Below, one piece after another: positions 63-43,216 of a stretch of DNA of 64,000 nt. Location of the stretch: the sequence record LC680885.1, one strand, 5' to 3'. Within the stretch, counting starts at the first letter, position 1; every line of letters starts with the position of its first letter. A model generated the notes under the pieces. The model saw only the letters and a program-made list of their open reading frames with translations. It was not told where the DNA came from and did no database searches. Position numbers and translations under genes: made by a program.

Positions 63-3000
63 ATGGCAGAAGTTTTTAATAAAGATTTAAAAGAAATAGT
101 TCACGATAATATGATGATATATTTTAATGAAATTAACACTAACCGTCAAATACCAGATATTAGAGATGGTTTGAAACCTATTCAAAGAAAAATACTTTAT
201 ATTATGTATAAAAATGGTTATAGATCTGATAAGAAATTTGCTAAATCAGCTAGAATAGCTGGTGACACTACTATATTACACCCACATAGTAATGATGGTA
301 TTTATGATTCTGCAGTTAATATGGTTACACCGTTTTCTATGAACCAACCATTAATTGAAGGACATGGTGCATTTGGTTCTATTACAGGAGCTTCAGCAGC
401 CGCTTCACGTTATTGTTTAACTGGAGAACATATAGTTGATATGAGTAATGGAGAACTTGTAAGAATTAAAGATATAGTACCTCATAGTGAATTAGACAGT
501 GATAATAAAATTGATAAAGTTGTCATGGACTTTAGACGTAAACCAGTTAAAGCAATTAAATTCTTTAATTCAGGTAAACATAATGTAATGGAATTAAACA
601 CTAATGCAGGCAAAACTATTAAAGCCACACCAAATCATCCTTTATTAACTGTAATCAAACACCCAACAAAAGGATTAGATTTCAAATGGAAAACAATGGA
701 TGAAATTAAAGAAGGAGATTATTTAATCAACAGAACTATGATTAAAAATGATCTCAAAGATTTTAGAAGTAAAAATCTTAATGAAAATGAAAAAGAAAGC
801 TTTAAAAAATGGGGAGAAATTCTTTCTAATAAATATTTTAATAGAACTTTAGATCCTGAATATGGAGTATTAATGAGAAGTATTGAAACTGAAAAGAGTC
901 TTCCTAATAAAGTATTAGAAGCTTGTTTAGGTTATAAAAGAGAATTCTTATTAGAGTTATTTAAACAAGATGGATTTATTGTAGATAATATTGGTTTAGT
1001 TATCGAAAGTCATAGTAAAAGATTCTTGCAAGAAATAGCTACTTTATTATCTCAATTTGGTATTTATTCTGTGATATCATTATTCAGTGATAGTGATTAT
1101 AGATTACAAATTCAAGATATTCACTCACTTAAGAATTTATCTAAACACTTAATTAAAGATGATGATTTATTTAAAGATAAAATTGATGAAATTATTGATA
1201 TGTATAGAAATTTAGAAAGTAATAATCCATATCAAGTTATTCCTTATTTAGATGAAGTATTAGATGAGAGAAAAATGACTTCTTATCTATATCCAGAGTT
1301 ATTTAATACTAGAAAGAATTTCTTAAATAACTTTAATTTACTTGAAGAAGAATACGGTATTGAAATTGAAGAAAGAGATCATTTAATGTTATTTATCTCT
1401 AAATACTTAGATAACTATACTTATTTTGAACAAGTAGAAAGTATTGAAGAGTTGGAAGAAGAGGAAGTAGTTTATTCTATTAAAGTTGATACAGATGATC
1501 ATTCATTTATGTCTGAAGGATTTATTCATCATAATACAGAAATGAGATTAAATAAATTCTCAGAAAGAAATTTATTAGATAATATCAATGATAATGCAGT
1601 TAATATGGTTAAGAACTTTGATGGATCAATGTTAGAACCTTTAGTGTTACCTTCTAAATTACCTTATGTATTAGTTAATGGTTCATTTGGTATTGGTGGT
1701 GGAGGACATAGATCTGATTTGCCACCACATTCTACTGAAGATGTAATTAATATTACTATTGACAGAATTAAAAATCCTAATAAGAAATTAAAAACACTTA
1801 TTAAAGATAATAAATTTAAACCACAATTTCCTTATGGTGGAGAAGCATTTTGTGATGATTTAGAGAAATGTTATCGTACAGGTAAAGGTTCTATGTTATT
1901 AAGATCTGTAGTTGAAAAAGATGAAAGTAAAATGACTCTTACAATTAAAGAAATTCCTTATAACGTTACTTTGACTAGGGTTAAAGAAGCTATCAGAGAA
2001 GCACATAAAGAGGAACAATTAGATGGTCTTAAAAATATTAGTGACGGAACTCAAAACGGAGATGTTCGTTTAATTCTTCAATATACAAAATCTTCTGACT
2101 TAGATTTAGCATTAAATCAATTGTATAAAGTTAAGACAATTACTTCTAGAGTTAACTTTGATGTTAAATTAGTAGATAATAATAAGCTAGTGGAAACTAA
2201 TTTATTAGGTATTATTGATAGATGGATTGAATTTAGACAATCAACTGTGAAACGTTTTAAATCATTTAAAATTAAAGATTTAAGAAGTCGTATTCATATT
2301 ATTGAAGGTCTATTAGTTGTATTAGATTCTAAGAATATCGATGAATTAATTAAAATAGTTAAATCTGGTAAAGGTAAAGAAGATATTATTGATGTAGTTA
2401 GTAAGAAATTTGGTATATCTCATGCACAAGCTTCTTATGTAGCTGAAATGAAACTATATACAATTAATAATCTTGAAATCAACAAATTGGTTGAAGAAAA
2501 GAAAGAAAAAGAAAAGATTGTTAATGAAGAAATGGTATACATGAAAGATGTAAGTAAACTGAATGATCTTATTATTAATGAAATGAAAGAAATTAAGAAA
2601 GATAAAAATACACTTAAACCATCTAGATTAACTAAGTACTCTGATATTGATTTTAAAAATGATAATAAAGAATTATTAATTAAAGATGAAGATTTCATGT
2701 GTATTATTACTAGACAAAATAAGATTAAGAAAGTTAAAGATGAAATTAGTAAACCTCAAAAGAGAAATGGTAAAGGTATCTCTATTGGTAAATTATCAGA
2801 TGGTGATATTCCATTAAACATCTTTAATGCTAATAGTAAAGATAACTTATTCTTAATTACTGATACAGGAAAAATATTCTATGATAAAGTTTATGAATTC
2901 CCTGAAATTAAATCATTGAATAACTTTGGTAAAGATATTAGTAGATTTGTTAAGAATGAAAAGATTATTAAAGCATTTACTTTAACTGATGAAGAATTTA

Positions 3001-3617
3001 AAGATCCAGATACAGCTTTTGTAGTAACAACAGCTTTGAATAAAACTAAAATGGTTATGGTTGAAGAAATTAAAAAATCTGGTGTAATTCTTATGAAATT
3101 AAATGAAGATGATAAAGTTATCAATGTTCATAATGTACATTCTAAGAAACCATTTAATTTAATAGCTATATCTGAAAAAGGTAATGCTATTAGATTCTCA
3201 AGTGAATTAATTCCAGTTCAAAATAGAAATACAATTGGTTCTTCTATATTCAGTAATACAACTATTAATAAAGATAATAAAGTTGCTTCAACTGTAGTTG
3301 ATTCTGGACAAGATAAGATGTTAATAGTAACTCATAAAGGTTTAGCTAAACAAATTATGACTGAAGACATTCCAGTTAAATCTAGAATGATTAAAGGTGT
3401 AATTGCAGCTAAATTTAAAAATGAAAAAGATTCTGTAATGTATATTAGTATGATAGATGATGAAGAAGATAATCTATTATTAGTTACTGAAAACAAAACT
3501 ATCAATGTACCTTTAAAAGAAATCAATACGTATAAAAGAACAACTTATGGTAATCCAGTAATGAAACTTAATGATAACGAATTCTGTATAGATTCTTCTA
3601 TCATTAAACATAATTAG
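63..3617 (+). CDS. gyrA: DNA gyrase subunit A precursor containing an intein
   Basis: DGLKPIQRKILY, HPHSNDGIY, GHGAFGS..AAASRY catalytic-Tyr region; C-terminal pinwheel repeats with GyrA-box-like QKRNGKG. Confidence 0.95.
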   Translation: MAEVFNKDLKEIVHDNMMIYFNEINTNRQIPDIRDGLKPIQRKILYIMYKNGYRSDKKFAKSARIAGDTTILHPHSNDGIYDSAVNMVTPFSMNQPLIEGHGAFGSITGASAAASRYCLTGEHIVDMSNGELVRIKDIVPHSELDSDNKIDKVVMDFRRKPVKAIKFFNSGKHNVMELNTNAGKTIKATPNHPLLTVIKHPTKGLDFKWKTMDEIKEGDYLINRTMIKNDLKDFRSKNLNENEKESFKKWGEILSNKYFNRTLDPEYGVLMRSIETEKSLPNKVLEACLGYKREFLLELFKQDGFIVDNIGLVIESHSKRFLQEIATLLSQFGIYSVISLFSDSDYRLQIQDIHSLKNLSKHLIKDDDLFKDKIDEIIDMYRNLESNNPYQVIPYLDEVLDERKMTSYLYPELFNTRKNFLNNFNLLEEEYGIEIEERDHLMLFISKYLDNYTYFEQVESIEELEEEEVVYSIKVDTDDHSFMSEGFIHHNTEMRLNKFSERNLLDNINDNAVNMVKNFDGSMLEPLVLPSKLPYVLVNGSFGIGGGGHRSDLPPHSTEDVINITIDRIKNPNKKLKTLIKDNKFKPQFPYGGEAFCDDLEKCYRTGKGSMLLRSVVEKDESKMTLTIKEIPYNVTLTRVKEAIREAHKEEQLDGLKNISDGTQNGDVRLILQYTKSSDLDLALNQLYKVKTITSRVNFDVKLVDNNKLVETNLLGIIDRWIEFRQSTVKRFKSFKIKDLRSRIHIIEGLLVVLDSKNIDELIKIVKSGKGKEDIIDVVSKKFGISHAQASYVAEMKLYTINNLEINKLVEEKKEKEKIVNEEMVYMKDVSKLNDLIINEMKEIKKDKNTLKPSRLTKYSDIDFKNDNKELLIKDEDFMCIITRQNKIKKVKDEISKPQKRNGKGISIGKLSDGDIPLNIFNANSKDNLFLITDTGKIFYDKVYEFPEIKSLNNFGKDISRFVKNEKIIKAFTLTDEEFKDPDTAFVVTTALNKTKMVMVEEIKKSGVILMKLNEDDKVINVHNVHSKKPFNLIAISEKGNAIRFSSELIPVQNRNTIGSSIFSNTTINKDNKVASTVVDSGQDKMLIVTHKGLAKQIMTEDIPVKSRMIKGVIAAKFKNEKDSVMYISMIDDEEDNLLLVTENKTINVPLKEINTYKRTTYGNPVMKLNDNEFCIDSSIIKHN
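414..1535 (+). mobile_element. Intein (374 aa) in GyrA with degenerate LAGLIDADG domain
   Basis: Starts CLTGEHIV right after SRY; block B IKATPNHPLL; ends VYSIKV..FIHHN then Thr; block E-like FLLELFKQDG and block H-like SKRFLQEIATLLSQFGI. Confidence 0.93.
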
Positions 3618-3628
3618 TTGAGAAAGAA

Positions 3629-3817
3629 GTGTATTATATGAAACCATGTAAATATATTATAAAAATAAGTAATGATTCTTATCTTTGCTATAAGTATGAT
3701 GAGCCTTTAGAAACAACAGATAAAAAGAAAGCAACTAGATTTAATGAGCTTGAATTAGCACAAGAAGAAGTGAAATTAATGGGAATTGGTGAAATTGAAA
3801 AAATTCCTTATAAATAA
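3629..3817 (+). CDS. hypothetical protein
   Basis: 62-aa ORF after gyrA, followed by a hairpin terminator. Confidence 0.5.
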   Translation: MYYMKPCKYIIKISNDSYLCYKYDEPLETTDKKKATRFNELELAQEEVKLMGIGEIEKIPYK

Positions 3818-3827
3818 AAATTAATCA

Positions 3828-3855
3828 GGGAGATGGCATTAATTTGCCATCTCCC
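3828..3855 (+). terminator. intrinsic terminator-like hairpin
   Basis: GGGAGATGGCA / TGCCATCTCCC 11-bp stem, T-rich downstream. Confidence 0.7.
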
Positions 3856-3888
3856 TCATATTATTAATTTTTTGGTAAATTCTCTTGA

Positions 3889-3900
3889 AACAACCAAATA
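3889..3900 (+). promoter_or_regulatory. putative late (non-virion RNAP) promoter AACA-N6-TA
   Basis: Matches the AR9 late-promoter consensus, 33 nt before the virion RNAP gene; short motif, chance match possible. Confidence 0.4.
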
Positions 3901-3933
3901 TTGTTAAATAAAAAGAATTGGATGTGAAATATA

Positions 3934-5614
3934 TTGGAAAAGAAATATATTAGATGTAATTCATGTAGTTCAGTACAAGAATATAGTGAAGATATTACAT
4001 CTTGTTCGGAATGTAGTTCTGAAAATATTTCAGTCATTAAATCTCCTGTTGATTTAGTTAATGAAGCTGAAGTATTAGTTACAGAATCTGAAATGGATTT
4101 CTTATTAGACTATAATGATTATCAAGAATACGATAAAAAAGGCAAATCTTGTTGGTTTGATATATATTTAATTAAGTATCCTAGAGATAATACTCAAATT
4201 AAACATATTGTATTACAGAATCAAAAAGGAAGAGAAGAAGATTTATTAATTGATTACGCTGGAGACGATAAAGGTGGTAATCCTATTGTAATAAATGATA
4301 CAGGAAGTATTAAGACTGTATTAAATGATGTTGATACTTTATCTGAAGTTGTTAAAGTTAGATTCTTAAGTAAAGAATCAACTAAGAGAAGAGGTAAAGA
4401 AGATTTTGGTTTAAATTCAGAAGAATACGTATCATTTAATAAAGATAAATATAATTTTTATAATGATGCTAAATTAAGAACTTTAGTTAAAGTTTTAGAA
4501 TCAATGGGCAACACATTATTCTTAGATAGCAAAAGTGATATTGTATGGAATAAAATATTCACTGAACACAATGTACTTAATTCACCTTTATTTACTTATC
4601 AAGAAGTAATGGATTACAATGAGACTAATCTTTATAAAGAATATGGAGATTATGAATTTGAAGAAAGATTAGAAGACGTTATATACGAATATCAATTAGA
4701 AAATGAAATTGGTGTATTTAATTTCTTATATAATAAAAATAAAGGTAATAAGCCTAAATTTACTGAAGATATGGAAGAAGTATATGCTACAGTAACTCCA
4801 TCTATGTTGTTATCTGATGATTTTAAAATGTCAGAAGATCACGGTAGAATTAATCCGAATGTATTGTCTTTATTATACTTTAAAATATTAGAAAAGAAAT
4901 TAGGTATTAGATCAATTGAATTAGTAACATATGTAAATTCTAATAGAGATGACATAATTCTATTCCCTGTTTCTTATAACGGTCAAGGATATGTATTAGC
5001 TGACTTTAAATTAGACAGTCCTATAGTTTTTAAAAATATGGATGATGTTAATAAATATTGTGCATACCAATTTGGATATGATCAAGAAAATGAAGAAAAT
5101 GAAAATATATTTAAATTCTCAGTTAAAGAAGTACCTGCTGAATTTAATTTCCAAAAAGCTATTTCAAGTAATATGGAAATAATTGAAAGATTCTTTATGA
5201 AATTCAATGAGAATACTTTAAATGAAACTGTATTAGAACCAGAATCAATTTTAAATGAAGCTGTTGGAGATAATAAAAAGAAACGTCAAGAAATACAAAA
5301 TAAAATATTAGACGTTATTTCTTCATTAGACAAAGATCAATCTAATATGAATAAATATAAAACATTCTTTGATGAAATGAATGATGAAGAATTCATGAGA
5401 TATATTAAGAGATTTGTTAATAGTAATGAAAACTTCTACATTGAAGTATTACCTAATAAATCTGAAGCTGGATTTAAAGAAGTTGAAGAAGCTTTAAACA
5501 AACTTGATGTACCTATGAATGAATTTGTTTATTATCGACATGATGGAAATAAAGATGATCCTTTAAGAACTAGATATAAAGTTCCAGTAGGGTATTTGCA
5601 TGTAAAACGTCTAC
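3934..5614 (+). CDS. rpoB: Virion RNA polymerase beta subunit C-terminal part, exon 1
   Basis: Ends VPVGYLHVKRL at the GTGTG 5' splice site; joins exon 2 in frame; N-terminal CxxC..CxxC extension. Confidence 0.82.
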
Positions 5615-5866
5615 GTGTGAAACGTTACACAAGAAAGACAATGAAGATTGTTGAGGATTGTGTGGCATAATAAATTATGCTAACTTTTTAGTTGAATAAG
5701 CAGTATCTACCTATAAAGATACGATATGCTATTAATAATACTCCCGCATGTATAAAAAGTGATTTTTATATGTGAAGCCGGGTGAAGACACTATATTTTA
5801 ATTATAGTGGTTAGGGAAATGTATATGGTTAGGAACACAAACTATTTATGAATGTCCTTTATATAT

Positions 5867-5892
5867 TAGTATTAAATGTAGACTTAATACTA
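5867..5892 (+). other. EBS1 hairpin of the group II intron
   Basis: 9-bp stem TAGTATTAA/TTAATACTA; loop ATGTAGAC pairs with exon 5609-5614 GTCTAC. Confidence 0.85.
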
Positions 5893-6096
5893 TGATTTAA
5901 TTGATAGGTTATTAAATCTCTTAACGGAATATAAAGGGAACAGATAGAACCTAAGTACATTTATTTACCTAGACTAAAAGGAACGTTTGATATCTCATAA
6001 TTTTTTATGAGAAGTAAGAGAGAATGTAGTACCATTGAAGCTATGATAATAAGTAGTGGAGGGAAAGTTCTTAGTCATAAAAAGCTCTAATCCTTT

Positions 6097-7446
6097 ATGA
6101 ACATTTCTTTATTCTTAGATAAAGGGATGATAACAATGAATAAAGGAAGAACAATACCAAAAGAAGTTTTTGTTGAAAGGTTAAATAATTTAGATGACAT
6201 TGATAAGTATGAATTCCTTATAGAAGATTATAAAGGAGTTACTAAGAAATATACTTTTAAACATACAGAATGTGATCATGAATTTCAAATGACCGGAAAA
6301 AACTTTTTAAATGGACAAAGATGTCCAAAATGTGCTCAAAATAAAAGAAACCAATCAAATGTCTTGGAAGATGAAAAAATAATCAATAGGGTTAAAGATT
6401 TAAATTTTGATATTATTAAATATAATGGTAAGACTCTTAAAAATGATTTTATGTGTAAAAAATGTAATTATGAATTTAATTGCACCTTTAAATTCCTTTT
6501 CTCACAAAAAGAGTGTCCTTACTGTGGACTAAAAAAGGTTGATAAAATCAATAAGAATATCGATAGCTTACAAAGAAAGCTAGATGAAAAAGGATATACT
6601 TTAGATATTATACCAGAGTATTTTAATTATACTAAAAAATCTAAATTCAAATGTAGAAATTGTAATGAGTACCTATTAGAATATTATAATAATATTAAAA
6701 ATTTAAATAAACCTCAGAATTGTAAATGTTTCGTAAAGAAACGATTAAACATGCTTCCAAGTTATAAGAAGAAATTAGAAAAATATGATAGTGATTACAA
6801 AATCTTTGATGAGACTTATATAAACTCTAAAACGCCATGTAAATTTAAACATTTAACTTGTGGTACTGAATTCCAAAAAAGACCGGCTGACTTCTTTTCA
6901 AATAGTCAAAAATGTCCTAAATGCGTTATGATTAATAAGAATAAGTATACAGATAAACAAGTTGAGAATATATTGTCTGATACTATGTTTGAAATTACCG
7001 GAGAATATTTTGGAAGTAAAGAAAAAACTGAGTTTAAATGTATGAATTGTGGACATGATTTCACATCAACTCTGATGTCTATATTAAATGGGAAAAAATG
7101 CGGTAAATGTGATTCTAGAGAAAGTTTAGGAGAATCTAGAATCAACAAATTCCTAGTTGACAACAATATAGATTTTGAAAGAGAAAAGTCATTTGATGGT
7201 TTAGAGTATAAATCTAAATTGAGATTTGATTTCTATGTAAAAGACAAAAACCTTCTTATAGAATTTGATGGAGCACAACATTTTGGTCCTATTGAAATAT
7301 TTGGTGGGGAAGATAGATTTAACGAAGATCAAATAAGAGACAATTTAAAAAATAAATACTGCCAAGATAATAACATTGATCTCCTTAGAATCCCTTATAC
7401 AGATATAAGAAATATTGATAAAATATTAGAGCAGAAATTTTTATGA
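6097..7446 (+). CDS. Intron-encoded putative homing endonuclease: five Zn-ribbon repeats plus a Vsr/DUF559-like PD-(D/E)xK domain (probable start 6136)
   Basis: HTECDHEF..CPKC-type repeats; C-terminal RFDFY..LLIEFDGAQHF..RDNLKNKYC..LLRI; no RT/YADD motif. Confidence 0.85.
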   Translation: MNISLFLDKGMITMNKGRTIPKEVFVERLNNLDDIDKYEFLIEDYKGVTKKYTFKHTECDHEFQMTGKNFLNGQRCPKCAQNKRNQSNVLEDEKIINRVKDLNFDIIKYNGKTLKNDFMCKKCNYEFNCTFKFLFSQKECPYCGLKKVDKINKNIDSLQRKLDEKGYTLDIIPEYFNYTKKSKFKCRNCNEYLLEYYNNIKNLNKPQNCKCFVKKRLNMLPSYKKKLEKYDSDYKIFDETYINSKTPCKFKHLTCGTEFQKRPADFFSNSQKCPKCVMINKNKYTDKQVENILSDTMFEITGEYFGSKEKTEFKCMNCGHDFTSTLMSILNGKKCGKCDSRESLGESRINKFLVDNNIDFEREKSFDGLEYKSKLRFDFYVKDKNLLIEFDGAQHFGPIEIFGGEDRFNEDQIRDNLKNKYCQDNNIDLLRIPYTDIRNIDKILEQKFL

Positions 7447-7450
7447 TGGA

Positions 7451-7484
7451 AAGCCGTATGAGGCGAAAGTCTCACGTACGGTTT
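7451..7484 (+). ncRNA. Group II intron domain V (catalytic)
   Basis: AAGCCGTATGAGGC-GAAA-GTCTC-AC-GTACGGTTT: AGC triad, GNRA loop, AC bulge, 9+5 bp. Confidence 0.95.
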
Positions 7485-7532
7485 GGTGCAGGGGAAAAGA
7501 GGTACGTTTAGTATACTCTTACCTATTGCAAT

Positions 7533-7894
7533 AACAATTACTTTCGAAGAAGAATGCATACAGTTTAGATGCTTCAACTAGATCAATGAAGACAGGTCAA
7601 TTAACTTCATCTGACAAAGTGGCAAGTGTATCAAATATGGAAGCTTCTGCATTGAAAGCTATTGGAGCTCAAGATATCTTAAGAGAATTGATGGGTCCAC
7701 GTTCAGACTCTATGAATGCTAAGCAAGAATTAAATAAAAACATCTCTATGTATGGATATTCTCGTTTAGAGGATTTACCAGATGATCTTTCTGATAAGAC
7801 TACATTAAATACTACTTTCTATTATTTACTTGGTGCTGGTATAGAATCTGATTTACTTAAAGACACTAGACCTGATTATGATCAAGAAGAATAA
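7533..7894 (+). CDS. rpoB: Virion RNA polymerase beta subunit C-terminal part, exon 2
   Basis: Spliced: KRL-QQLLSKKNAYSLDASTRSMKTGQ..VSNMEASALKAIGAQDILRELMGPRSD, like the bacterial beta GEMEVWALEAYGA..LQEMLT.KSD region; spliced product 680 aa. Confidence 0.85.
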
Positions 7895-7900
7895 TAAATA

Positions 7901-7915
7901 TATATTATAAAAATG
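7901..7915 (+). promoter_or_regulatory. putative early (virion RNAP) promoter TATATTAT-N5-TG
   Basis: One of 14 intergenic copies with fixed spacing; hairpin begins at the final G. Confidence 0.75.
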
Positions 7916-7950
7916 AGGTAATGACATTAGCTTGTCATTACCTCTAATAT
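7915..7950 (+). repeat. GAGGTAATG..CATTACCTC-TAATAT hairpin repeat, copy 1
   Basis: 12-bp inverted repeat; five intergenic copies. Confidence 0.85.
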
Positions 7951-7972
7951 ATTTAAATAATAGGAGAGTGTT

Positions 7973-8407
7973 TTGGATATGGAAAAAGTTATAGAAAATA
8001 CGGTAAAAGAATTAAGAGAATTGGCAGTAAAAGAAATAGAGTTTTTTGGTGAACCTGAAATAAACGTATTTCATATTAATGGATATACACTTATAAGCTT
8101 AAGTAGAGATTTTTATCTTTTCACATCAGTTAAAGATGATAATAAAGAGATTTTAAACGCATTATTAAAAGATGATTTATTTAATTATTTTGATGAATAT
8201 GATAATAAATTTGGATTTTTCGTATATTATGAAACTGTTGTAGATAAAAAGACAAATAAAAAAGGAGAATGGAAGAATCTCAAACACTTAATAGATACTT
8301 TTGAATGGGAAAATGGAGACCTTTTAGAATTTGTAAAGGAAGAAAATTTATCAGTGAATGAGTCGTTAAAGAAAAAAGAATTAAGAGAATCTACAGAAGA
8401 ATTATAA
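7973..8407 (+). CDS. hypothetical protein
   Basis: ORF with AGGAG RBS after an early promoter (likely start 7979). Confidence 0.65.
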   Translation: MDMEKVIENTVKELRELAVKEIEFFGEPEINVFHINGYTLISLSRDFYLFTSVKDDNKEILNALLKDDLFNYFDEYDNKFGFFVYYETVVDKKTNKKGEWKNLKHLIDTFEWENGDLLEFVKEENLSVNESLKKKELRESTEEL

Positions 8408-8630: not shown

Positions 8631-8667
8631 GAGGTAATGGCATATTATATGTCATTACCTCTAATAT
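8631..8667 (+). repeat. GAGGTAATG hairpin repeat, copy 2
   Basis: 14-bp stem with a G-U pair, followed by TAATAT. Confidence 0.8.
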
Positions 8668-8692
8668 ATCGCAATTAAAGTATTTTCAAGCA

Positions 8693-10080: not shown

Positions 10081-10455
10081 ATGAAAAAATTAATGATTTT
10101 AGGTCTAACAATATTTTTAACAGTTATTTTAGCAGCATGTAGTGGTGAAGAAAAGAACCCTAGTGAAGAAACAGCAAAAGGAGATAGTTATAAATTAATA
10201 TATTACGAAATTTTAAATAATGGAGATAGTGATTATCCTAGAGTGGAAATTGCTTATGAAAATAGAATTAAAGAAGTTCAATCCGAATCTATTGATATCG
10301 ATAATTTAATTGAGCATGTCTCAAAAGATCCAAAAGAAAAACCTAAATTAGTTATTGACGGTGATGAGTATCATGTATATAGACAACCTTACATGACTTA
10401 TAATCAAGAAGATATTGAAGGTGAAGTAGAAAGTAAAGAGGAAGTGAAAAAATAA
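10081..10455 (+). CDS. lipoprotein
   Basis: MKK-hydrophobic signal with lipobox LAAC. Confidence 0.75.
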   Translation: MKKLMILGLTIFLTVILAACSGEEKNPSEETAKGDSYKLIYYEILNNGDSDYPRVEIAYENRIKEVQSESIDIDNLIEHVSKDPKEKPKLVIDGDEYHVYRQPYMTYNQEDIEGEVESKEEVKK

Positions 10456-11051
10456 TGAAAAAGTTTTCTATGATCCTAGTATCAATAATTACATTATTAG
10501 CATTCGTTAGTCAAGATGCATTAGCTATTGGAAGTTCAACTTCCAGTAGTTCTTCATCTTCTTCATCAGTCAGCTCATCTGCATCGAGATCATCAACTTC
10601 ATCAAGTATGAGTTCTTCATCATCAGCAAGTAGATCAGCTATGCAAAGTAGTATGAATGCTCAAAATAATGCTAACAGTGCAAGTAGAAATAGTTCATTG
10701 AACAGTAGTATGAGTAGAAATAATTCATCATTTTCATTAACTAACCCAAATAGTATGTATAATAGAAATAATCAAATGAATTCATATAATTCACAGCTTA
10801 GACAAAGTAATTATATGAATAATATGTTGATGTACTATTTATTATTTAATGGTATTAATAATCAAAATAACTTAAAGAAACAGAAATCAATTTTAATGAA
10901 TCAAATGAATAAAGATCAAAAGTTATATACAGTGACAATTAAAACTAAAGATAATAAAAAGCAATTGTTAACTGTCACTAAAAAGGATTATGATAAAATT
11001 AAAGAAGGAGATACTGTTAAATATTCTAATAATAAATTAGAAATAAAATAA
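10455..11051 (+). CDS. exported Ser/Asn-rich low-complexity protein
   Basis: Signal peptide ending ALA; long Ser run; small beta-rich C-terminal domain; start overlaps the previous stop. Confidence 0.7.
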   Translation: MKKFSMILVSIITLLAFVSQDALAIGSSTSSSSSSSSSVSSSASRSSTSSSMSSSSSASRSAMQSSMNAQNNANSASRNSSLNSSMSRNNSSFSLTNPNSMYNRNNQMNSYNSQLRQSNYMNNMLMYYLLFNGINNQNNLKKQKSILMNQMNKDQKLYTVTIKTKDNKKQLLTVTKKDYDKIKEGDTVKYSNNKLEIK

Positions 11052-15837: not shown

Positions 15838-15874
15838 GAGGTAATGACAAATTATATGTCATTACCTCTAATAT
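15838..15874 (+). repeat. GAGGTAATG hairpin repeat, copy 3
   Basis: GAGGTAATGACA/TGTCATTACCTC plus TAATAT. Confidence 0.85.
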
Positions 15875-15893
15875 ACTATAAGGAGAGTTTAAA

Positions 15894-21304: not shown

Positions 21305-22606
21305 ATGTCAAAATTAACTAGCAAAATTAATGATTTGATTAAATCAAACCCATCAGTGTACGGTAAAGAAGATAATTACACGCCTATGTATGAATCAGGA
21401 GTTGACTTATTGGACTATAGAAATGGTTTCTTAAATACTGTTACAGATGATGAACGTATTGGATTAATGGGCGGTAAAGTAACTACATTTATTGGTGGAT
21501 CAGGTTCAGGTAAAACAACACTTGCTATTCAAGCAGCAGCAAAAATTGTTGAAAAATATGAGAACTCAAGTGTTATTCATTATGACTTTGAAGATGCAAC
21601 TACTGATGAACGTATTTATCAAGTAACAGGTTGGTCTAAAGAAATGAAACAAGAAAAATACACTAAATTAAATAAAAAGATTAGTTTAGATTCAGTAGAT
21701 CAATTAATTCGTGGTATCCGTGATACTAAATTAGAAAATGAAGAAGAATTCACTATCCATACAGACAAAATTGATCCAGAAACTGGAGAAAAAGTTTCAT
21801 TCATGGCTCCAACAGTAGTTATCATTGACTCTGTTGCTACAATGGCTTCTAAAGAAATTGATGATAAAGATGGTGAAGGTGGACAAATGAATGCCACTAA
21901 ACAAGCTAAAGATAATACAACATTCATTAAACGTATTATTGGTTCATCTACATTAAATTCAGCTAATATTATGCTTATTTTAATTAATCATATTACAACT
22001 AAAATTGATATCAATCCATATGCAGCTACACCTAAAGAATTAAACTATCTTAAACAAGGTGAAGCATTACCAGGTGGTAAAGCAATCAACTATATGGCGA
22101 ATAACATGTTTAAGATTAGTCCATCACAGGCTTTAGATCCAGAAGGAAATTCTAATCAAGCTAAATATGGAATTAAAGGTTTTATCAATACAGTTGAAGT
22201 TATTAAATCACGTTCAAATGCAGCTGGTGCTAAATTTGATTTAATCTTTGAACAAAAGAATGGCTTTAATAATGCTTTATCAAATCTATTGTTCTTACAA
22301 AGTGAAAAAATGCTTAAAGGTAATCCAAGAGCTTATCGTATTGATGGTTATGATGATGTTAGCTTTACACTTAAAACATTTATGGATAAATATGAGAGTA
22401 ATAAAGATTTTAAAGAATACTTTGATAACTATGTTAAAGGTATCTATAAAGAAAAATTCTTAGCTAATATTGAACATGAATCTAGTTTAGATAATGAAGA
22501 ATTAGAATTAGTTGAATTAGTTAATAAAGATGAAGATATTTGGTTAGGTTCAGACGGTAATTATTATGATTCTGATAAAAATGCTATAGAAGTATCTAAA
22601 GATTAA
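21305..22606 (+). CDS. recA: RecA/UvsX-family recombinase
   Basis: Walker A GGSGSGKTT, YDFEDA, Walker B VVIIDSVA, LINHI, PGGKAINY, IKSRS. Confidence 0.9.
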   Translation: MSKLTSKINDLIKSNPSVYGKEDNYTPMYESGVDLLDYRNGFLNTVTDDERIGLMGGKVTTFIGGSGSGKTTLAIQAAAKIVEKYENSSVIHYDFEDATTDERIYQVTGWSKEMKQEKYTKLNKKISLDSVDQLIRGIRDTKLENEEEFTIHTDKIDPETGEKVSFMAPTVVIIDSVATMASKEIDDKDGEGGQMNATKQAKDNTTFIKRIIGSSTLNSANIMLILINHITTKIDINPYAATPKELNYLKQGEALPGGKAINYMANNMFKISPSQALDPEGNSNQAKYGIKGFINTVEVIKSRSNAAGAKFDLIFEQKNGFNNALSNLLFLQSEKMLKGNPRAYRIDGYDDVSFTLKTFMDKYESNKDFKEYFDNYVKGIYKEKFLANIEHESSLDNEELELVELVNKDEDIWLGSDGNYYDSDKNAIEVSKD

Positions 22607-22758: not shown

Positions 22759-24900
22759 ATGACAAAAGACAAAACACAAAGAATGGTAGAAATTGAAGAT
22801 AAGCGAAGTCATGAGTTTTTATCAGAACCTCTATTAATGCCTAACGTTAATAGAACTAATGGTAACAGATCACAAATGTTTACATCTCACATTGGTCAAT
22901 GTATTCAATTAACTGGAGCTGAACCACCTTTAATTCAAACTGGTTTTGAAAATCAAGTAGGTAAATATTCAACTGGATACAAGAAAGCTAATAGAGATTT
23001 TGAAGTTATTTATAAATTTGAAAAGAATAAGTACGTTAATTACTATTTAATTAAGTACAAAGATAATGATGAATATGATGTAATTATTAGAGAAGAAGCT
23101 AATCACTTAGCTGAGAAGTTCGGAAATAAATATAATAATGATGAAATTGATAAACTAAAAGTTGGAGATACTGTTAGTAAAGAAACTGTATTATTTAAAG
23201 ATCAAAACTATGATGAAGATAATAATTTCCAATATGGTGCTAATGCAACTTCTGTATTCTTACCATTCAAAGGTATGACGAATGAGGACGGAATTGTAGT
23301 ATCAGAATCATTAGCAGAGAAAATGTCAAGTTATTTTGTAAATGTAATCAATATCACTATCAATACAAACGATATTCCTTTAAATTTATATGGAAATGAA
23401 GATGAGTATAAATCATTTCCAGATGTAGGTGAAGAAGTTCAAAATGGAGTATTGTGTGCAACTCGTAGATTGAATTACGATGAGATTATTCATAAATTTA
23501 AAAATGAAATGCTTACTAAAACATTAGAAGATGATAATGCTTATAAAGTTCACGGTAAAGTTATTGATATTGATGTACTTAATAATGAAGATATTGAAAA
23601 ATTAGAAAATCAAAAATATTCAGAGCAATTTGTCAAGTATATTAAAGAATTAAGACACTTTTATAAAACATTTGTAACTGTTACAGATGATATTGTACGT
23701 AAAAAGAAATTTAGTAATGACTTAATTAGAATTCATAATAAATTTAAAGGTTATATTGATGATAACGCTAAATTAGTTTATGACAATAATCAATTTGATA
23801 AAATTATCTTTAGAGTTAAAGTTTTAGAAAAGAAACCTTTAGTTCATGGATCGAAAATCACCACACGCTATGGGGGTAAAGGAGTCGTAGCTGAAATTGT
23901 ACCTGATGATCAAATGCCAATGATCACAGAGTTCGATGGAGAAGACTTCACTAAAGATTCTACTAAAACACCAATTAGTAAACGAGTAGATTTAATCCAT
24001 AATAATATGGGTATCATTAACCGTGGAAATCCATCAGCTTTAATTGAGTTAGAATTAAATCATGTATCAAATGTAATAAGACATCGTATAAGTAAATTAG
24101 ATGATGTTAATCAACAGAAAGAATATCTATTAGGATATATTAAAGATGTAGATAAAATTTCATACGATAATTATGTTAAATTATTTAATCAATTAGATTT
24201 ATCTGAAACTAAAGAAGCTATTAATGAAATTATTAAAGAAGGTATTGTATTACATCAAGCACCATTCTTTGGCAATATTGATTCAGAACAATTAAGATAC
24301 GTATTTAATAAATATAATATTAAGAAAAATAGATTAAATATAAGTAATAGAACATTCATGGTTGGAGATTTATATCACTTAAAACTTAAACATGAACCGT
24401 CTGGTAAATTAAGTGCAAAATCTCTTGACTTTAACAATTACAGTGGAATTCCTACTAGAACTCCAGATAGTAAAAAGTATCTATCAAGAATTAATAATAA
24501 TCCACTTAGAATTGGCGAGATGGAAACATCTAATATGATGATCGGTGGATCTATTAAAGCAATCAATCAATTAACGAATATGTATTCAAATAACCCAGAT
24601 ATGCGTAAACGTTTATTAGTTGAATTGTATACAGGTAATCCATTTAAGATCAATACAGAGAGTATACAAAAACGAACTCAAAATAATAATACTAAAGTAC
24701 TTAATGCTTACTTTAGTCCATTGAATGTTAGTATGACATTTGATGAACCTGAAGAAGATGAATTACTAGATATCATGGATTTAAATGAAGACCAATTAGA
24801 ATTCTTAATGGAAAAATACGAAAATTTAGATGATATCAATGATTTAACACCTCAAGAAATAAATGGTTTAGTTAAAGAAATTATTGAAGAAAGTAAATAA
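22759..24900 (+). CDS. rpoB: Non-virion RNA polymerase beta subunit, C-terminal half
   Basis: NRSQMFTSHIGQ, NEDGIVVS, GSKITTRYGGKGVV, NRGNP, KLKH, LRIGEME; preceded by an early promoter. Confidence 0.9.
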   Translation: MTKDKTQRMVEIEDKRSHEFLSEPLLMPNVNRTNGNRSQMFTSHIGQCIQLTGAEPPLIQTGFENQVGKYSTGYKKANRDFEVIYKFEKNKYVNYYLIKYKDNDEYDVIIREEANHLAEKFGNKYNNDEIDKLKVGDTVSKETVLFKDQNYDEDNNFQYGANATSVFLPFKGMTNEDGIVVSESLAEKMSSYFVNVINITINTNDIPLNLYGNEDEYKSFPDVGEEVQNGVLCATRRLNYDEIIHKFKNEMLTKTLEDDNAYKVHGKVIDIDVLNNEDIEKLENQKYSEQFVKYIKELRHFYKTFVTVTDDIVRKKKFSNDLIRIHNKFKGYIDDNAKLVYDNNQFDKIIFRVKVLEKKPLVHGSKITTRYGGKGVVAEIVPDDQMPMITEFDGEDFTKDSTKTPISKRVDLIHNNMGIINRGNPSALIELELNHVSNVIRHRISKLDDVNQQKEYLLGYIKDVDKISYDNYVKLFNQLDLSETKEAINEIIKEGIVLHQAPFFGNIDSEQLRYVFNKYNIKKNRLNISNRTFMVGDLYHLKLKHEPSGKLSAKSLDFNNYSGIPTRTPDSKKYLSRINNNPLRIGEMETSNMMIGGSIKAINQLTNMYSNNPDMRKRLLVELYTGNPFKINTESIQKRTQNNNTKVLNAYFSPLNVSMTFDEPEEDELLDIMDLNEDQLEFLMEKYENLDDINDLTPQEINGLVKEIIEESK

Positions 24901-30531: not shown

Positions 30532-32523
30532 ATGTTAAAATTTAATGAAATTAATGAAAGTAATTTAGATGACGTACAAAAATATTTAGAGGAGCAATCT
30601 TATGTATATTATAATACATCAGATCAACCAGAATTAACTGATGAAGAATTTGACAAACTATTAAGAGAATACGAAAAGTTCCGTCCATTTAATGGCGGAG
30701 CTTTACCTTCTAAAGGTAAAAAATTAGTAGATGTTTCACATGAATATCCTGAATTAGTAGGAACAGTTTCTAAGGTTAATTCAGTTGAAGAATTAGCTGA
30801 ATGGATTGAAGAAAAAGGACTAATTAATAGAGAATTATTAATTACACAGAAATATGATGGTAATTCAGTATTAGTTATTTTAACTACTAAAGGAGATTAT
30901 TTAGTAACTAAATCAGCATTAACTAGAGGTAAAGATGGTAAAGGTGCTGACTTAACTGACTTCTTCAGTCATATTAAAATTAAAAAATCAGATGTCGATA
31001 TTAATGCAGTTGATTTATCTGAAGACGATATTGATATCGCTATTAAGTGTGAAGCAGTAATGAGTTATAGTAACTTTAATAAGATTGATGAAGAGTATGC
31101 TAACCCTAGATCAATCGTTGCAGGATTATTAAACTCAGATGATGGATATAAGAAACGTAAGTTAATTAATTTATTACCATTGAGAATTAATATTAGTAAT
31201 AAAGAATTAACTCGACAAGAAGAATTAAATTTAATTTCAGCAATTACTAGTCATAGTACTGTATTTGATCAGCTTGATCCACAGTATAATTTTGTTATGG
31301 AAGATGAACACGATTATAAAGACTTTAATGAATTATATCATCAGATAGCTGATGAAAGAGAGTATTATGAATACATGATTGATGGATTAGTTATTGAAGC
31401 TCTTGATGAAGATGATAGAAATCGTTTAGGTAGATTAAATGATCGTAATAAGTTTGATGTAGCATTGAAATTCCCATATATGACTAAAAAGACTAATGTT
31501 ATTGATATTGAATTTGATGTATCTGAAAATGGTACAGGTAGATATACACCTGTAGTTAGATTTGAACCTATTTATTTTAATGGTGCTAAATGTGAAAGAG
31601 TTTCTATTTCTAACTATAAACGTTTTAAAGAACTTCAATTAGTTAAAGGACAAGAAGTTATTATTGAATATCGTAATGATGTTTTGAGTTATTTAACTCC
31701 ATCTCCTACTAACGAAATTACTGGAGAACCTATACCGTTCATTAAAGAGTGTGTATACTGTGGTGAAGAACTTGAAGTTAATGAAAATGAAACATTTGTA
31801 TCATGTATTAATAACGATTGTGAATGTAGAGTATTAGGTATTATTAACAACTATGTAGATAAAATGAGTATTAAAGGAATTGAATATTCTACTATTAATA
31901 AGCTTTATAAAGGTAACAAACTACCTAACGGAATCCAAAGTTTATATGAAATTGATAAAAACGATATTATGCAAGTAGATACTTTTAAAGAAAAATCAGC
32001 TCAGAATATTATTAATACAATTCATAAAAATAAAGAATATTATGACTATGATGTATTAGGTTCATTAGGATTAAATGGAGTTGGAAGAACTACATTTAAA
32101 TTAGTTACTAAAGTCTATGATCCACAAGAAATAGATTATACAGATTTAAGTATTAAAGATTTAACTTCTATTAAAGGAATCGCTGATATTACTGCTGAGA
32201 TTATTATTAATGGTTATAAACAGAATAAAGATTTAATTGAATTCTTATTTAATGAATTGGATGTTAAATCACTTAAAAAAGAAATGGAAGCTAATAAAGA
32301 TGATTCAGTTGAGCCAATGAATATTGTATTTAGTGGATTTAGAGATGCTGAATTTAAAGAACAGTTAGAACTTAAAGGTCATAAAGTAACTTCATCAGTT
32401 TCAGGTAAGACTGATTTATTAGTTACTCCAGATCCAAATTCAGGTTCATCTAAGATTAATAAAGCTAAAGAAAAAGGTATCAAGATCATTGATATTGAAA
32501 GTTCTAAAGGTGAGTTGTTATAA
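30532..32523 (+). CDS. ligA: NAD-dependent DNA ligase
   Basis: YYN..P.LTDEEFD, KYDG adenylation motif, DGLV, ALKFP, TGRYTPV, Cys4 Zn finger, HhH, BRCT (SVSGKTDLLV). Confidence 0.93.
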   Translation: MLKFNEINESNLDDVQKYLEEQSYVYYNTSDQPELTDEEFDKLLREYEKFRPFNGGALPSKGKKLVDVSHEYPELVGTVSKVNSVEELAEWIEEKGLINRELLITQKYDGNSVLVILTTKGDYLVTKSALTRGKDGKGADLTDFFSHIKIKKSDVDINAVDLSEDDIDIAIKCEAVMSYSNFNKIDEEYANPRSIVAGLLNSDDGYKKRKLINLLPLRINISNKELTRQEELNLISAITSHSTVFDQLDPQYNFVMEDEHDYKDFNELYHQIADEREYYEYMIDGLVIEALDEDDRNRLGRLNDRNKFDVALKFPYMTKKTNVIDIEFDVSENGTGRYTPVVRFEPIYFNGAKCERVSISNYKRFKELQLVKGQEVIIEYRNDVLSYLTPSPTNEITGEPIPFIKECVYCGEELEVNENETFVSCINNDCECRVLGIINNYVDKMSIKGIEYSTINKLYKGNKLPNGIQSLYEIDKNDIMQVDTFKEKSAQNIINTIHKNKEYYDYDVLGSLGLNGVGRTTFKLVTKVYDPQEIDYTDLSIKDLTSIKGIADITAEIIINGYKQNKDLIEFLFNELDVKSLKKEMEANKDDSVEPMNIVFSGFRDAEFKEQLELKGHKVTSSVSGKTDLLVTPDPNSGSSKINKAKEKGIKIIDIESSKGELL

Positions 32524-37111: not shown

Positions 37112-37126
37112 TATATTATTAAATTG
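37112..37126 (+). promoter_or_regulatory. putative early promoter TATATTAT-N5-TG
   Basis: Consensus; GAGGTAATG hairpin starts at the final G. Confidence 0.75.
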
Positions 37127-37162
37127 AGGTAATGACATACAATTTGTCATTACCTCTAATAT
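37126..37162 (+). repeat. GAGGTAATG hairpin repeat, copy 4
   Basis: 12-bp stem plus TAATAT. Confidence 0.85.
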
Positions 37163-37189
37163 ATTAAACAATCAAAGGAGAAAACGATC

Positions 37190-43146: not shown

Positions 43147-43161
43147 TATATTATAAAAGTG
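43147..43161 (+). promoter_or_regulatory. putative early promoter TATATTAT-N5-TG
   Basis: Consensus; GAGGTAATG hairpin at the final G. Confidence 0.72.
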
Positions 43162-43195
43162 AGGTAATGGATATTATATTCATTACCTCTAATAT
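43161..43195 (+). repeat. GAGGTAATG hairpin repeat, copy 5
   Basis: 13-bp stem with G-U plus TAATAT. Confidence 0.8.
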
Positions 43196-43216
43196 TATTT
43201 ACACTAGGAGAGTGAA

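What the first reader, a model, noticed from the sequence alone, without database searches (positions are those of the whole stretch)
6097..7446. Group II intron carrying a Vsr-like, Zn-ribbon-repeat homing endonuclease instead of a maturase
Seen: the domain IV ORF has five C/HxxC..CxxC repeats and a C-terminal RFDFY..IEFDGAQH..RD..K nuclease domain, and stops 4 nt before DV; no RT motifs. Known: this nuclease class (EDxHD/Vsr-like, e.g. I-Bth0305I) occurs in phage group I introns, while non-RT ORFs in group II introns are known mainly as LAGLIDADG proteins in fungal mitochondria. In phiKZ-like phages an intron nuclease in an RNAP gene can cut the intron-less allele of a co-infecting relative. 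Inference: a chimeric element that splices as group II but spreads by DNA-break homing via the phage RecA/UvsX, and may be a weapon in phage-phage competition.
Basis: partly seen in the sequence, partly recalled or inferred. Interest (0 to 1): 0.88.

Follow-up and report, generated by a model that had tools for sequence, protein, structure and literature searches.

The report
Phage group II intron carrying nuclease
A self-splicing group II intron in the virion RNA polymerase gene of Staphylococcus jumbo phage S6 carries a DNA-cutting "homing" nuclease instead of the usual reverse transcriptase; this is real and biologically unusual, but this exact element was already described in 2025.

Summary
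The window is Staphylococcus phage S6 (LC680885). A 1,918-nt group IIB intron (5615-7532) interrupts the virion RNA-polymerase beta-subunit gene. Its domain IV holds a 436-aa ORF (6136-7446; the longest ORF starts at 6097). The ORF has five zinc-ribbon modules and a C-terminal nuclease domain. The best structural match of that domain is the I-Bth0305I (EDxHD) catalytic domain, then Vsr. No RT or maturase is present.

It is not new. Merk, Jones & Eddy (NAR 2025, PMC12350094) list this intron, these coordinates and this nuclease architecture in their Table S1 and text. Splicing, cleavage and homing remain untested.

- EBS1-IBS1 pairing, with covariation across four phage lineages.
- Strong covariation for the whole ribozyme fold.
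- Exact boundaries of the nuclease cassette in the domain IV loop; the stop codon lies inside the stem.
- Three ORF-less copies at the same site (PALS_2, Listeria phage LPJP1, one IMG/VR contig), which suggest S6 gained the nuclease secondarily.
- A tight cluster of synonymous differences around the insertion site in intron-less relatives.
- At least three further intron sites within about 200 nt of the same gene in related phages.

The parts
3934..5614 (+). Exon 1 of the virion RNA-polymerase beta-subunit gene. It is the orthologue of AR9 gp077: an N-terminal non-RNAP part plus the RNAP beta C-terminal region.
   Evidence: phrog_3233 'RNA polymerase beta subunit' E=1.7e-13 and phrog_23439 E=7e-44. 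AR9 gp077 is annotated as a virion RNAP subunit. The uninterrupted 677-aa homologue in UFV_DC4 is 100% identical over the last 260 aa.
5603..5607 (+). IBS2 candidate (UAAAA), tentative
   Evidence: Complementary to UUUUA in the hairpin loop at 5796-5800. LPJP1 has UAAG opposite CUUA in the equivalent loop, but not at the same aligned columns.
5609..5614 (+). IBS1 (GUCUAC), the last 6 nt of exon 1
   Evidence: Perfect complement of EBS1 at 5878-5883. LPJP1 and IMG/VR contig L146 have GACUAC paired with GUAGUC, a compensatory change. PALS_2 has EBS1 GUAGGC, which pairs through a G-U wobble.
5615..7532 (+). Group IIB intron, 1,918 nt, running from 5' GUGUG to AAU 3'
   Evidence: Rfam RF02004 and RF00029. 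In-frame exon ligation. Intron-less allele in UFV_DC4. Same coordinates as Merk et al. Table S1, 191615-193532.
5679..5821 (+). Part of domain I matched by Rfam group-II-D1D4-5
   Evidence: 44.5 bits, gathering 34.5.
5796..5800 (+). EBS2 candidate (UUUUA) in the loop of hairpin 5789-5809, tentative
5878..5883 (+). EBS1 (GUAGAC) in the loop of hairpin 5870-5889
   Evidence: Only copy in the 5' part of the intron. Chance of one copy in a shuffle is 0.07. It covaries with IBS1 in LPJP1 and L146 at the homologous alignment columns.
6074..6083 (+). Domain IV basal stem, 5' strand (GUCAUAAAAA)
   Evidence: Pairs with 7438-7447. The stem is conserved in all four lineages, with one compensatory pair.
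6084..7437 (+). Nuclease gene cassette (1,354 nt). It occupies the domain IV terminal loop and replaces a 17-nt loop seen in PALS_2.
   Evidence: Alignment of S6 and PALS_2. The intron is 97.7% identical up to 6083 and again from 7438.
6136..7446 (+). Homing-endonuclease ORF, 436 aa. The maximal ORF starts at 6097. It has five CapR/DUF4379-type zinc-ribbon modules plus a Vsr/EDxHD-like nuclease domain (about residues 326-436).
   Evidence: Pfam DUF4379. phrog_559, phrog_9084 and phrog_7140 homing endonucleases. AF2 pLDDT 87.5 for the full protein and 96 for the C-terminal domain. Foldseek matches to 3r3p and 1cw0. Invariant D365, E376, H382, D402 and K405.
7438..7447 (+). Domain IV basal stem, 3' strand (UUUUUAUGAU). 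It contains the ORF's stop codon UGA at 7444-7446.
7451..7484 (+). Domain V, with catalytic triad AGC at 7452-7454 and a GAAA tetraloop
   Evidence: RF00029 at 66.4 bits. The helix is conserved with compensatory pairs.
7487..7530 (+). Domain VI, with the bulged branch-point A candidate at 7525, 7 nt before the 3' splice site
   Evidence: Consensus fold of four introns. 8 of 17 pairs show compensatory changes.
7533..7894 (+). Exon 2 of the virion RNAP beta-subunit gene
   Evidence: phrog_3233 E=1.5e-14. Weak Pfam RNA_pol_Rpb2_7 hit, E=0.0034, below the family cut-off. In frame with exon 1.

Best explanation
Identity. This is a group IIB self-splicing intron in the essential virion RNA-polymerase beta-subunit gene of Staphylococcus jumbo phage S6. 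Its domain IV loop has been occupied by a free-standing-type homing endonuclease gene. The protein has five zinc-ribbon DNA-binding modules and a Vsr/EDxHD-type nuclease domain.

Proposed mechanism.
- The ribozyme removes the whole insert from the mRNA, so the polymerase subunit is still made. This step is inferred from conserved structure and in-frame exons. It needs no intron protein, because ORF-less twins sit in the same essential gene of other phages.
- During co-infection the nuclease cuts the intron-less allele, or an ORF-less-intron allele, of a related phage.
- The break is repaired from the S6 copy by phage recombination. A UvsX-like gene lies in the window.
- Repair copies in the intron, the nuclease gene and a short stretch of flanking exon. 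That stretch includes the IBS1 bases the ribozyme needs.
- So the element spreads at the DNA level like a mobile group I intron, not by retrohoming.

Shown here: the anatomy, the fold and the covariation. Inferred: splicing, cleavage, homing and any competitive benefit.

The element is already in the literature (Merk, Jones & Eddy 2025).
For: Intron:
- Rfam hits.
- 164-pair consensus fold across S6, PALS_2, LPJP1 and an IMG/VR contig. 98.3% of cells are paired. 56 pairs show compensatory changes against 26+-3 in shuffles (0/500) and 3-9 in slid controls.
- EBS1/IBS1 covariation.
- In-frame ligation, and an intron-less allele whose protein is 100% identical over the last 260 aa.

Nuclease:
- No RT.
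- Top PDB fold match 3r3p, I-Bth0305I, probability 1.0, TM 0.63; then Vsr 1cw0, TM 0.71 normalised by query.
- Catalytic-type residues invariant in 35 homologues.
- Intact ORF with an RBS.
- Homologues at 31-33% identity sit in introns of the same gene in MarsHill and AR9.
- 8 of the 40 closest IMG/VR relatives lie next to group I introns.

Nuclease gained secondarily:
- PALS_2 has the same intron, 97.7% identical, with a 17-nt loop in place of the cassette.
- LPJP1 and L146 have ORF-less introns at the identical site.

Footprint at the target:
- 6 of the 10 S6/UFV_DC4 differences in 1,380 nt fall within -14..+41 of the insertion site.
- All are synonymous; scan P about 8e-5.
- Two of them break IBS1 pairing in the intron-less alleles.

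Other:
- UvsX-like recombinase at 21305-22606.
- Published description of the same element.
Against: - There are no experimental data for splicing, cleavage or homing, here or in the published paper.
- The nuclease's target is unknown.
- The S6 nuclease has no close relative. The best is 45% identical, on a contig whose DNA could not be read. So there is no population evidence that this particular gene is moving.
- Only one sequenced phage carries the nuclease-containing form.
- The flank differences could reflect selection for EBS-IBS pairing or shared ancestry of S6 and PALS_2 rather than co-conversion.
- Sequence-level searches do not link the domain to any solved nuclease. The link is at fold level, with modest Foldseek E-values (1e-3).
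Confidence: 0.8

Rival explanations
1. The nuclease gene is its own selfish element. Its target is the domain IV loop of ORF-less copies of this intron (PALS_2-type alleles), not the intron-less exon junction. It would spread from intron to intron, while the intron itself is old and vertically inherited or otherwise immobile.
For: ORF-less introns at exactly this site occur in three other lineages, so such targets are common. The S6 and PALS_2 introns are 97.7% identical and differ only by a clean replacement of the domIV loop.
Against: No homologous nuclease was found in any other group II intron of this DV type: 0 of 60 IMG/VR sites. Intron-encoded nucleases of this family in neighbouring sites of the same gene sit in different introns, which points to exon targets. 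The clustered exon differences around the insertion site fit exon-level events. This rival is not exclusive of the main explanation.
Confidence: 0.2
2. The ORF is a decaying or domesticated nuclease. It would be inactive as a nuclease, or retained as a splicing cofactor in the way some LAGLIDADG proteins became maturases.
For: There is a single known copy with no close relatives. One of the five zinc ribbons has a non-canonical CxC.
Against: All family-invariant residues are kept (D365, E376, G379, H382, D402, K405). The model is confident: pLDDT 96 for the nuclease domain. The ORF is intact and has an RBS. ORF-less versions of the same intron sit in the same essential gene in PALS_2, LPJP1 and L146, so no intron-encoded splicing factor is needed.
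Confidence: 0.1
3. The intron moves by classical retrohoming, using a group II reverse transcriptase supplied in trans by another intron or by the host. On this reading the nuclease ORF is a passenger.
For: The related Listeria phage LPJP1 has one RT-encoding group II intron beside ORF-less ones. The published paper proposes trans-mobilisation for that phage.
Against: Only one group II intron is listed for S6. No Staphylococcus phage appears among the listed tblastn hits of the LPJP1 RT; about half of the hits are listed, so this is not exhaustive. Intron-less Staphylococcus-phage alleles carry two mismatches to EBS1 (GACUUC against GUCUAC), which would make them poor retrohoming targets.
Confidence: 0.05

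Closest known systems
Phage group II introns encoding CapR/DUF4379-repeat plus EDxHD/Vsr-like homing endonucleases (Merk, Jones & Eddy, Nucleic Acids Res 2025, PMC12350094)
   Same: This is the same element. Table S1 lists LC680885, 'viral RNA pol beta', intron 191615-193532, ORF 192136-193443, class IIB, GTGTG...AT, AGC triad, 'HEG'. Those positions equal window 5615-7532 and 6136-7443. The text describes 3-5 CapR/DUF4379-like domains followed by an EDxHD/Vsr-like domain, and proposes nuclease-based homing.
   Different: Nothing differs in kind. The paper marks pseudoknot (EBS/IBS) evidence as absent for S6 and PALS_2. It does not give the domain IV insertion boundaries or the allele comparison, which were worked out here. 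Its three other nuclease-carrying introns (AR9, PBS1, MarsHill) are in a different gene, the beta-prime N-terminal subunit.
   Same: It is the best structural match of the S6 C-terminal domain (Foldseek probability 1.0, TM 0.57/0.63). Both have a Vsr-like core and both are encoded inside a phage self-splicing intron.
   Different: Sequence similarity is undetectable by HMMER. The S6 N-terminal DNA-binding region is made of five zinc ribbons. The host intron is group II, not group I. Cleavage by the S6 protein is untested.
LAGLIDADG-encoding group II introns of fungal mitochondrial rRNA genes (Mullineux et al. 2010, cited in PMC12350094)
   Same: A group II ribozyme carries a DNA endonuclease rather than an RT, and is thought to move by double-strand-break repair.
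   Different: The nuclease family is unrelated: there is no LAGLIDADG hit. The host is a phage protein-coding gene rather than an organellar rRNA gene.
PhiPA3 gp210, an HNH homing endonuclease in an intron, which targets PhiKZ gene gp178 (Birkholz et al., Science 2024, PMC11620839)
   Same: A jumbo phage carries an intron-encoded nuclease, shown there to cut a co-infecting relative and give a competitive advantage.
   Different: The nuclease fold differs (HNH nickase). The intron type was not read from the paper here. The host is Pseudomonas. The function is shown there and only conjectured here.

Membership tests
Group II intron (class IIB) | Domain V with catalytic triad, and domain VI with a bulged branch-point A near the 3' end | tested here: met
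   RF00029 scores 66.4 bits against a gathering score of 40. The AGC triad is at 7452-7454. The bulged A is at 7525, 7 nt from the 3' splice site. Helices are kept by compensatory changes in four lineages.
Group II intron (class IIB) | 5' GUGYG and 3' AY boundaries, with a domain I-IV architecture | tested here: met
   GUGUG at 5615 and AAU ending at 7532. RF02004 D1-D4-5 scores 44.5 bits against a gathering score of 34.5. The consensus fold has 164 pairs.
Group II intron (class IIB) | EBS1-IBS1 (and EBS2-IBS2) pairing between domain I loops and the 5' exon | tested here: met
   EBS1 GUAGAC (5878-5883) pairs with IBS1 GUCUAC (5609-5614). In LPJP1 and L146 the pair covaries to GUAGUC/GACUAC. 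EBS2/IBS2 (UUUUA/UAAAA) is only tentative.
Group II intron (class IIB) | The insert is a discrete intervening sequence: an intron-less allele exists and the exons join in frame | tested here: met
   UFV_DC4, MarsHill and SA1 lack it. The joined exons give a protein 100% identical to UFV_DC4 over 260 aa.
Group II intron (class IIB) | Self-splicing, with lariat formation | not testable with these tools
   Needs RT-PCR or in-vitro splicing. It is not reported in the literature found.
EDxHD / Vsr-like homing endonuclease | Vsr-like (PD-(D/E)xK-related) nuclease fold | tested here: met
   The C-terminal 111 aa model has pLDDT 96. Foldseek top hits are 3r3p_B (I-Bth0305I) and 1cw0/1vsr (Vsr), all at probability 1.0. 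20 of 24 family members hit Pfam DUF2726 and 6 of 24 hit DUF559.
EDxHD / Vsr-like homing endonuclease | Conserved acidic and histidine catalytic residues (E, D, H, D) | tested here: inconclusive
   D365, E376, (D378), H382, D402 and K405 are invariant or nearly so within the family. A residue-by-residue superposition on I-Bth0305I or Vsr catalytic residues was not obtained.
EDxHD / Vsr-like homing endonuclease | Site-specific cleavage of the allele that lacks the element | not testable with these tools
   Requires a biochemical assay.
Group II intron-encoded protein (RT/maturase) | Reverse-transcriptase domain (RVT_1, YADD) and maturase X domain | tested here: not met
   No RVT or maturase family in Pfam at E<=1. 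No RT among the meaningful fold matches. By contrast, about 30 of 60 IMG/VR introns with the same DV type carry an RT ORF.
HNH endonuclease (the label carried by phrog_559 and several GenBank records) | HNH/beta-beta-alpha-metal motif | tested here: not met
   No HNH family in Pfam. The nuclease domain folds like Vsr. The label is an annotation carry-over.
LAGLIDADG homing endonuclease | LAGLIDADG motif and domain | tested here: not met
   No Pfam hit.

The most novel reading that the evidence does not exclude
The nuclease-armed intron may be a weapon in competition between co-infecting Staphylococcus jumbo phages. It would cut the essential virion-RNAP gene of intron-less relatives. The tight cluster of synonymous changes at the insertion site in intron-less phages (UFV_DC4, MarsHill, SA1) would then be the footprint of an arms race: escape from cleavage, and loss of the IBS1 pairing needed for productive invasion. 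The three or four alternative introns packed into about 200 nt of this gene would be mutually excluding occupants of the same battleground. A group II ribozyme would have been recruited recently as a safe harbour by a nuclease family that normally lives in group I introns.
Probability: 0.25. Interest if true: 0.65.

Novelty: already known. Interest (0 to 1): 0.3.

Why it matters
Group II introns normally move by reverse transcription. An intron that keeps the ribozyme but has swapped its mobility engine for a DNA endonuclease shows that the splicing module and the mobility module are interchangeable between intron classes.

S6 and its relatives offer a natural series in one essential gene:
- an intron-less allele;
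- an ORF-less intron;
- a nuclease-carrying intron;
- neighbouring introns of other kinds.

That makes a good experimental system for three questions: how nucleases colonise introns, whether co-conversion must carry the exon-binding bases along, and whether such elements decide the outcome of phage co-infections. The concept and this very example are already published. What remains of value is experimental, together with the finer anatomy given here.

Tried and rejected
- Sequence-level searches of the PDB with the whole protein, the whole-family profile and the C-terminal profile found only zinc-ribbon proteins or nothing. The link to I-Bth0305I/Vsr appeared only at fold level.
- Foldseek with the full-length model was dominated by the zinc-ribbon repeats. 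Refolding the C-terminal domain alone was needed.
- Rfam, even at E<=0.1, did not classify the other inserts in this gene (MarsHill, PB50, LY01, Madawaska, Machias, AH12, AR9). Their group I nature rests on GenBank annotation only.
- The contig of the closest nuclease homologue (45% identity) has no retrievable DNA, so its context is unknown. Its gene layout, with 395 nt of non-coding sequence before the ORF, is compatible with an intron but proves nothing.
- A loose regular expression for DV on 80 IMG/VR nuclease loci was too noisy. It was replaced by Rfam scans of the top 40 loci.
- An exact search for the S6 DV sequence in IMG/VR found nothing. A degenerate DV pattern found 60 DV sites in 59 stretches.
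- I first read the near-identity of S6 and PALS_2 over the last 460 nt of exon 1 as a co-conversion tract. I rejected that. S6 is just as close to the intron-less UFV_DC4 there, and the divergent block 4100-5150 is a PALS_2-specific mosaic patch.
- An ungapped S6/UFV_DC4 comparison broke at an indel about 523 nt upstream. The statistics were restricted to -520..+860.
Full report
**Where the window comes from.** A BLAST of 5000-8000 against the phage collection gives a 100% match to Staphylococcus phage S6, LC680885.1 (window position = record position minus 186000). S6 belongs to the AR9/PBS1-like jumbo phages and is listed among uracil-DNA phages (PMC10303552).

**Observation.**
- The ORF 6097..7446 exists. 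The likelier start is ATG 6136, which is preceded by AAAGGGA. It is also the start used by GenBank and the literature.
- Rfam finds the two halves of a group II intron around the ORF. D1-D4 (RF02004) lies at 5679-5821 and D5/D6 (RF00029, 66.4 bits) at 7449-7532. There are no other group II hits in the 64 kb.
- The intron runs from GUGUG at 5615 to AAU at 7532 (1,918 nt).
- Joining 5614 to 7533 restores one reading frame of 680 codons.
- Pfam finds DUF4379 zinc fingers (E=1.6e-17, four stretches), weak CapR and DUF2726 hits, and no reverse transcriptase or maturase.
- PHROGs places the protein in homing-endonuclease families (phrog_559 at 2e-79, plus phrog_9084 and phrog_7140).
- Four zinc-ribbon modules are canonical. 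A fifth has CxxC...CxC.

**Host gene.**
- The exons match phrog_3233 "RNA polymerase beta subunit".
- The gene is orthologous to AR9 gp077. That record describes a protein whose RNAP domain is found in virions.
- MarsHill, Madawaska and Machias annotate the orthologue as "viral RNA polymerase beta subunit".

**The ribozyme is under selection.**
- The same intron without any ORF (581 nt) sits at the same site in phage PALS_2.
- ORF-less introns lie at exactly the same codon position of the orthologous gene in Listeria phage LPJP1.
- The same is true of an uncultivated phage contig, IMGVR_UViG_3300043104_000318.
- A four-way alignment gives a 164-pair consensus structure with 98.3% of cells paired.
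- 56 pairs show compensatory changes, against 26+-3 in shuffles (0 of 500 reach the observed value) and 3-9 when partners are slid by 1-3 columns.
- EBS1 (GUAGAC, 5878-5883, in a hairpin loop) is the exact complement of the last six exon bases (GUCUAC).
- In LPJP1 and the IMG/VR contig both sides have changed together (GUAGUC with GACUAC). PALS_2 pairs through a G-U wobble.
- The published table marks pseudoknot evidence as missing for S6 and PALS_2, so this adds to it.
- EBS2/IBS2 (UUUUA/UAAAA) is plausible but not secured.

**The protein.**
- AlphaFold2 with 35 homologues gives pLDDT 87.5 and five repeated hairpin modules followed by an alpha/beta domain.
- The C-terminal 111 residues, folded alone, give pLDDT 96.
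- Their best PDB match is the catalytic domain of the homing endonuclease I-Bth0305I (3r3p_B, probability 1.0). Next come Vsr (1cw0, 1vsr), then TnsA, PvuRts1I and the R2 endonuclease domain. All are PD-(D/E)xK-type nucleases.
- D365, E376, G379, H382, D402 and K405 are invariant in the family.
- HMMER finds no solved relative by sequence.
- The "HNH" label attached to phrog_559 and to several GenBank records is not supported.

**How the nuclease gene sits in the intron.**
- The S6 and PALS_2 introns are 97.7% identical up to 6083 and again from 7438.
- Between those points S6 has 1,354 nt (6084-7437) where PALS_2 has 17 nt.
- The flanks form the domain IV stem, GUCAUAAAAA (6074-6083) with UUUUUAUGAU (7438-7447). 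That stem is conserved in all four lineages.
- The ORF's stop codon lies inside the 3' strand of the stem.
- The domain IV loop is 3 nt in the IMG/VR contig, 17 nt in PALS_2, about 60 nt in LPJP1 and 1,354 nt in S6.
- With three ORF-less lineages, including the outgroups, the simplest reading is that the S6 lineage gained the nuclease gene by insertion into the loop. Loss in PALS_2 cannot be excluded.

**Where the nuclease family normally lives.**
- The nearest phage relatives are only 31-34% identical. They include Lactococcus 949-group phages, Staphylococcus K-like phages ("VSR homing endonuclease") and PBS1.
- In the large protein collection the best hit is 45% identical, on a contig without available DNA.
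- Of the 40 closest IMG/VR loci, none has a group II hit and 8 lie next to group I introns.
- Of 60 IMG/VR group II DV sites of the same DV type, none has a Vsr-like ORF and about 30 have an RT.
- Residence in a group II intron is therefore exceptional for this family, as the published paper also concludes.

**Alleles and mobility.**
- UFV_DC4, MarsHill and SA1 lack the intron.
- S6 and UFV_DC4 differ at 10 positions between -520 and +860 of the insertion site. Six of them (-14, -5, -2, +5, +17, +41) lie within 55 nt of the site. All are synonymous, and the scan-statistic P is about 8e-5.
- Positions -5 and -2 are in IBS1. Intron-carrying alleles have GUCUAC. Intron-less Staphylococcus-phage alleles have GACUUC or GGCUUC, with two mismatches to EBS1.
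- This fits three readings, which cannot be separated here: co-conversion of short flanks during DNA-level homing, selection for exon-ribozyme pairing, or escape of intron-less phages from invasion.
- A UvsX-like recombinase is encoded at 21305-22606.
- No group II RT was seen in Staphylococcus phages among the listed hits.

**A crowded gene.** Within about 200 nt of this gene, related phages carry inserts at three other sites.
- About 20 nt upstream of the S6 site: roughly 330-nt ORF-less inserts in LY01, Madawaska, PB50, Machias and AH12.
- 65 nt downstream: MarsHill and PB50 carry a 317-319-aa nuclease (the MarsHill protein is 31% identical to the S6 one). Machias, AH12 and AR9 have ORF-less inserts there.
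- Further downstream: AR9 has an insert with a "VSR" nuclease.
- Rfam does not classify these inserts.

**Comparison with the literature.**
- Merk, Jones & Eddy (NAR 2025, PMC12350094) searched phage genomes with the same Rfam models and report 20 group II introns.
[quoted passage not shown] It also has a row for the ORF-less PALS_2 intron.
- Their text describes the nuclease architecture: 3-5 CapR/DUF4379/DUF723-like domains plus an EDxHD/Vsr-like domain. It proposes nuclease-mediated homing.
- They state that splicing was not confirmed experimentally.
- A later literature search found no follow-up.
- The precedent for an intron nuclease acting in phage competition is Birkholz et al. 2024.

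**Verdict.** The element is a clear member of a recently described kind, and this specimen is itself published. Interest as a discovery is therefore low. The residual value is the finer anatomy above and a well-defined set of experiments.

Noticed in passing
window 63-3617 (+): The 1,184-aa DNA gyrase subunit A gene carries an intein. Orthologues in MarsHill, Madawaska, Machias and PB50 are annotated as intein-containing GyrA. It is a second selfish element 2 kb upstream of the intron.
   Followed up: partly
L004 (MarsHill) 2187-3514; L005 (PB50) about 2101-2447 and 2517-3835; L008, L009, L010, L012; L007 (AR9) 3342-3669 and 3778-5006: The same polymerase gene has at least three other insertion sites within about 200 nt in related phages. 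One is about 20 nt upstream of the S6 site, one is 65 nt downstream and one is further downstream. Some inserts carry Vsr-type nucleases 31-33% identical to the S6 one. Rfam does not recognise any of them, even at E<=0.1.
   Followed up: partly
L010 (Machias) 2517-2696 and L012 (AH12) 2517-2696: The insert at the +65 site is only 180 nt here, which is short for a self-splicing intron. It is unexplained. It may be a minimal or degenerate intron, or the exon boundaries inferred from tblastn may be imprecise.
   Followed up: no
L146:6151-6667 (-), contig IMGVR_UViG_3300043104_000318: An uncultivated AR9-like phage has a 517-nt ORF-less group II intron at exactly the S6 insertion site of the orthologous gene. 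Its domain IV loop is 3 nt and its 3' end is AC.
   Followed up: yes
window 4100-5150 compared with L002 (PALS_2): The PALS_2 copy of exon 1 has a mosaic block that is 10-18% diverged from S6, while both flanks are nearly identical. This points to recombination with another lineage inside the N-terminal, non-polymerase part of the gene.
   Followed up: partly
window 7915-7952, 8631-8668, 15838-15875, 37126-37163, 43161-43196: A conserved intergenic hairpin, GAGGTAATG(A/G)C-loop-GTCATTACCTC followed by TAATAT, recurs at least five times. It also occurs in the related phages. There is no T-run after the stem. It may be a phage-specific terminator or regulatory site.
   Followed up: partly
window 21305-22606, 22759-24900, 30532-32523, 40057-41367 (+): These are a UvsX-like recombinase (phrog_97, 6e-41), two further uninterrupted RNA-polymerase beta-like genes (phrog_3295, phrog_2987) and an NAD-dependent DNA ligase.
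   Followed up: partly
window 10455-11051 (+): A 198-aa ORF has a signal-peptide-like N-terminus and long serine/asparagine-rich low-complexity stretches.
   Followed up: no
L017, L024-L028, L030, L036 (IMG/VR loci): In eight of the 40 closest IMG/VR relatives of the nuclease, one or more group I intron cores (RF00028, 50-104 bits) lie upstream of the nuclease gene; in five loci the core ends about 90-130 nt before it. Several loci carry two to four group I introns in tandem within 2-4 kb.
   Followed up: no
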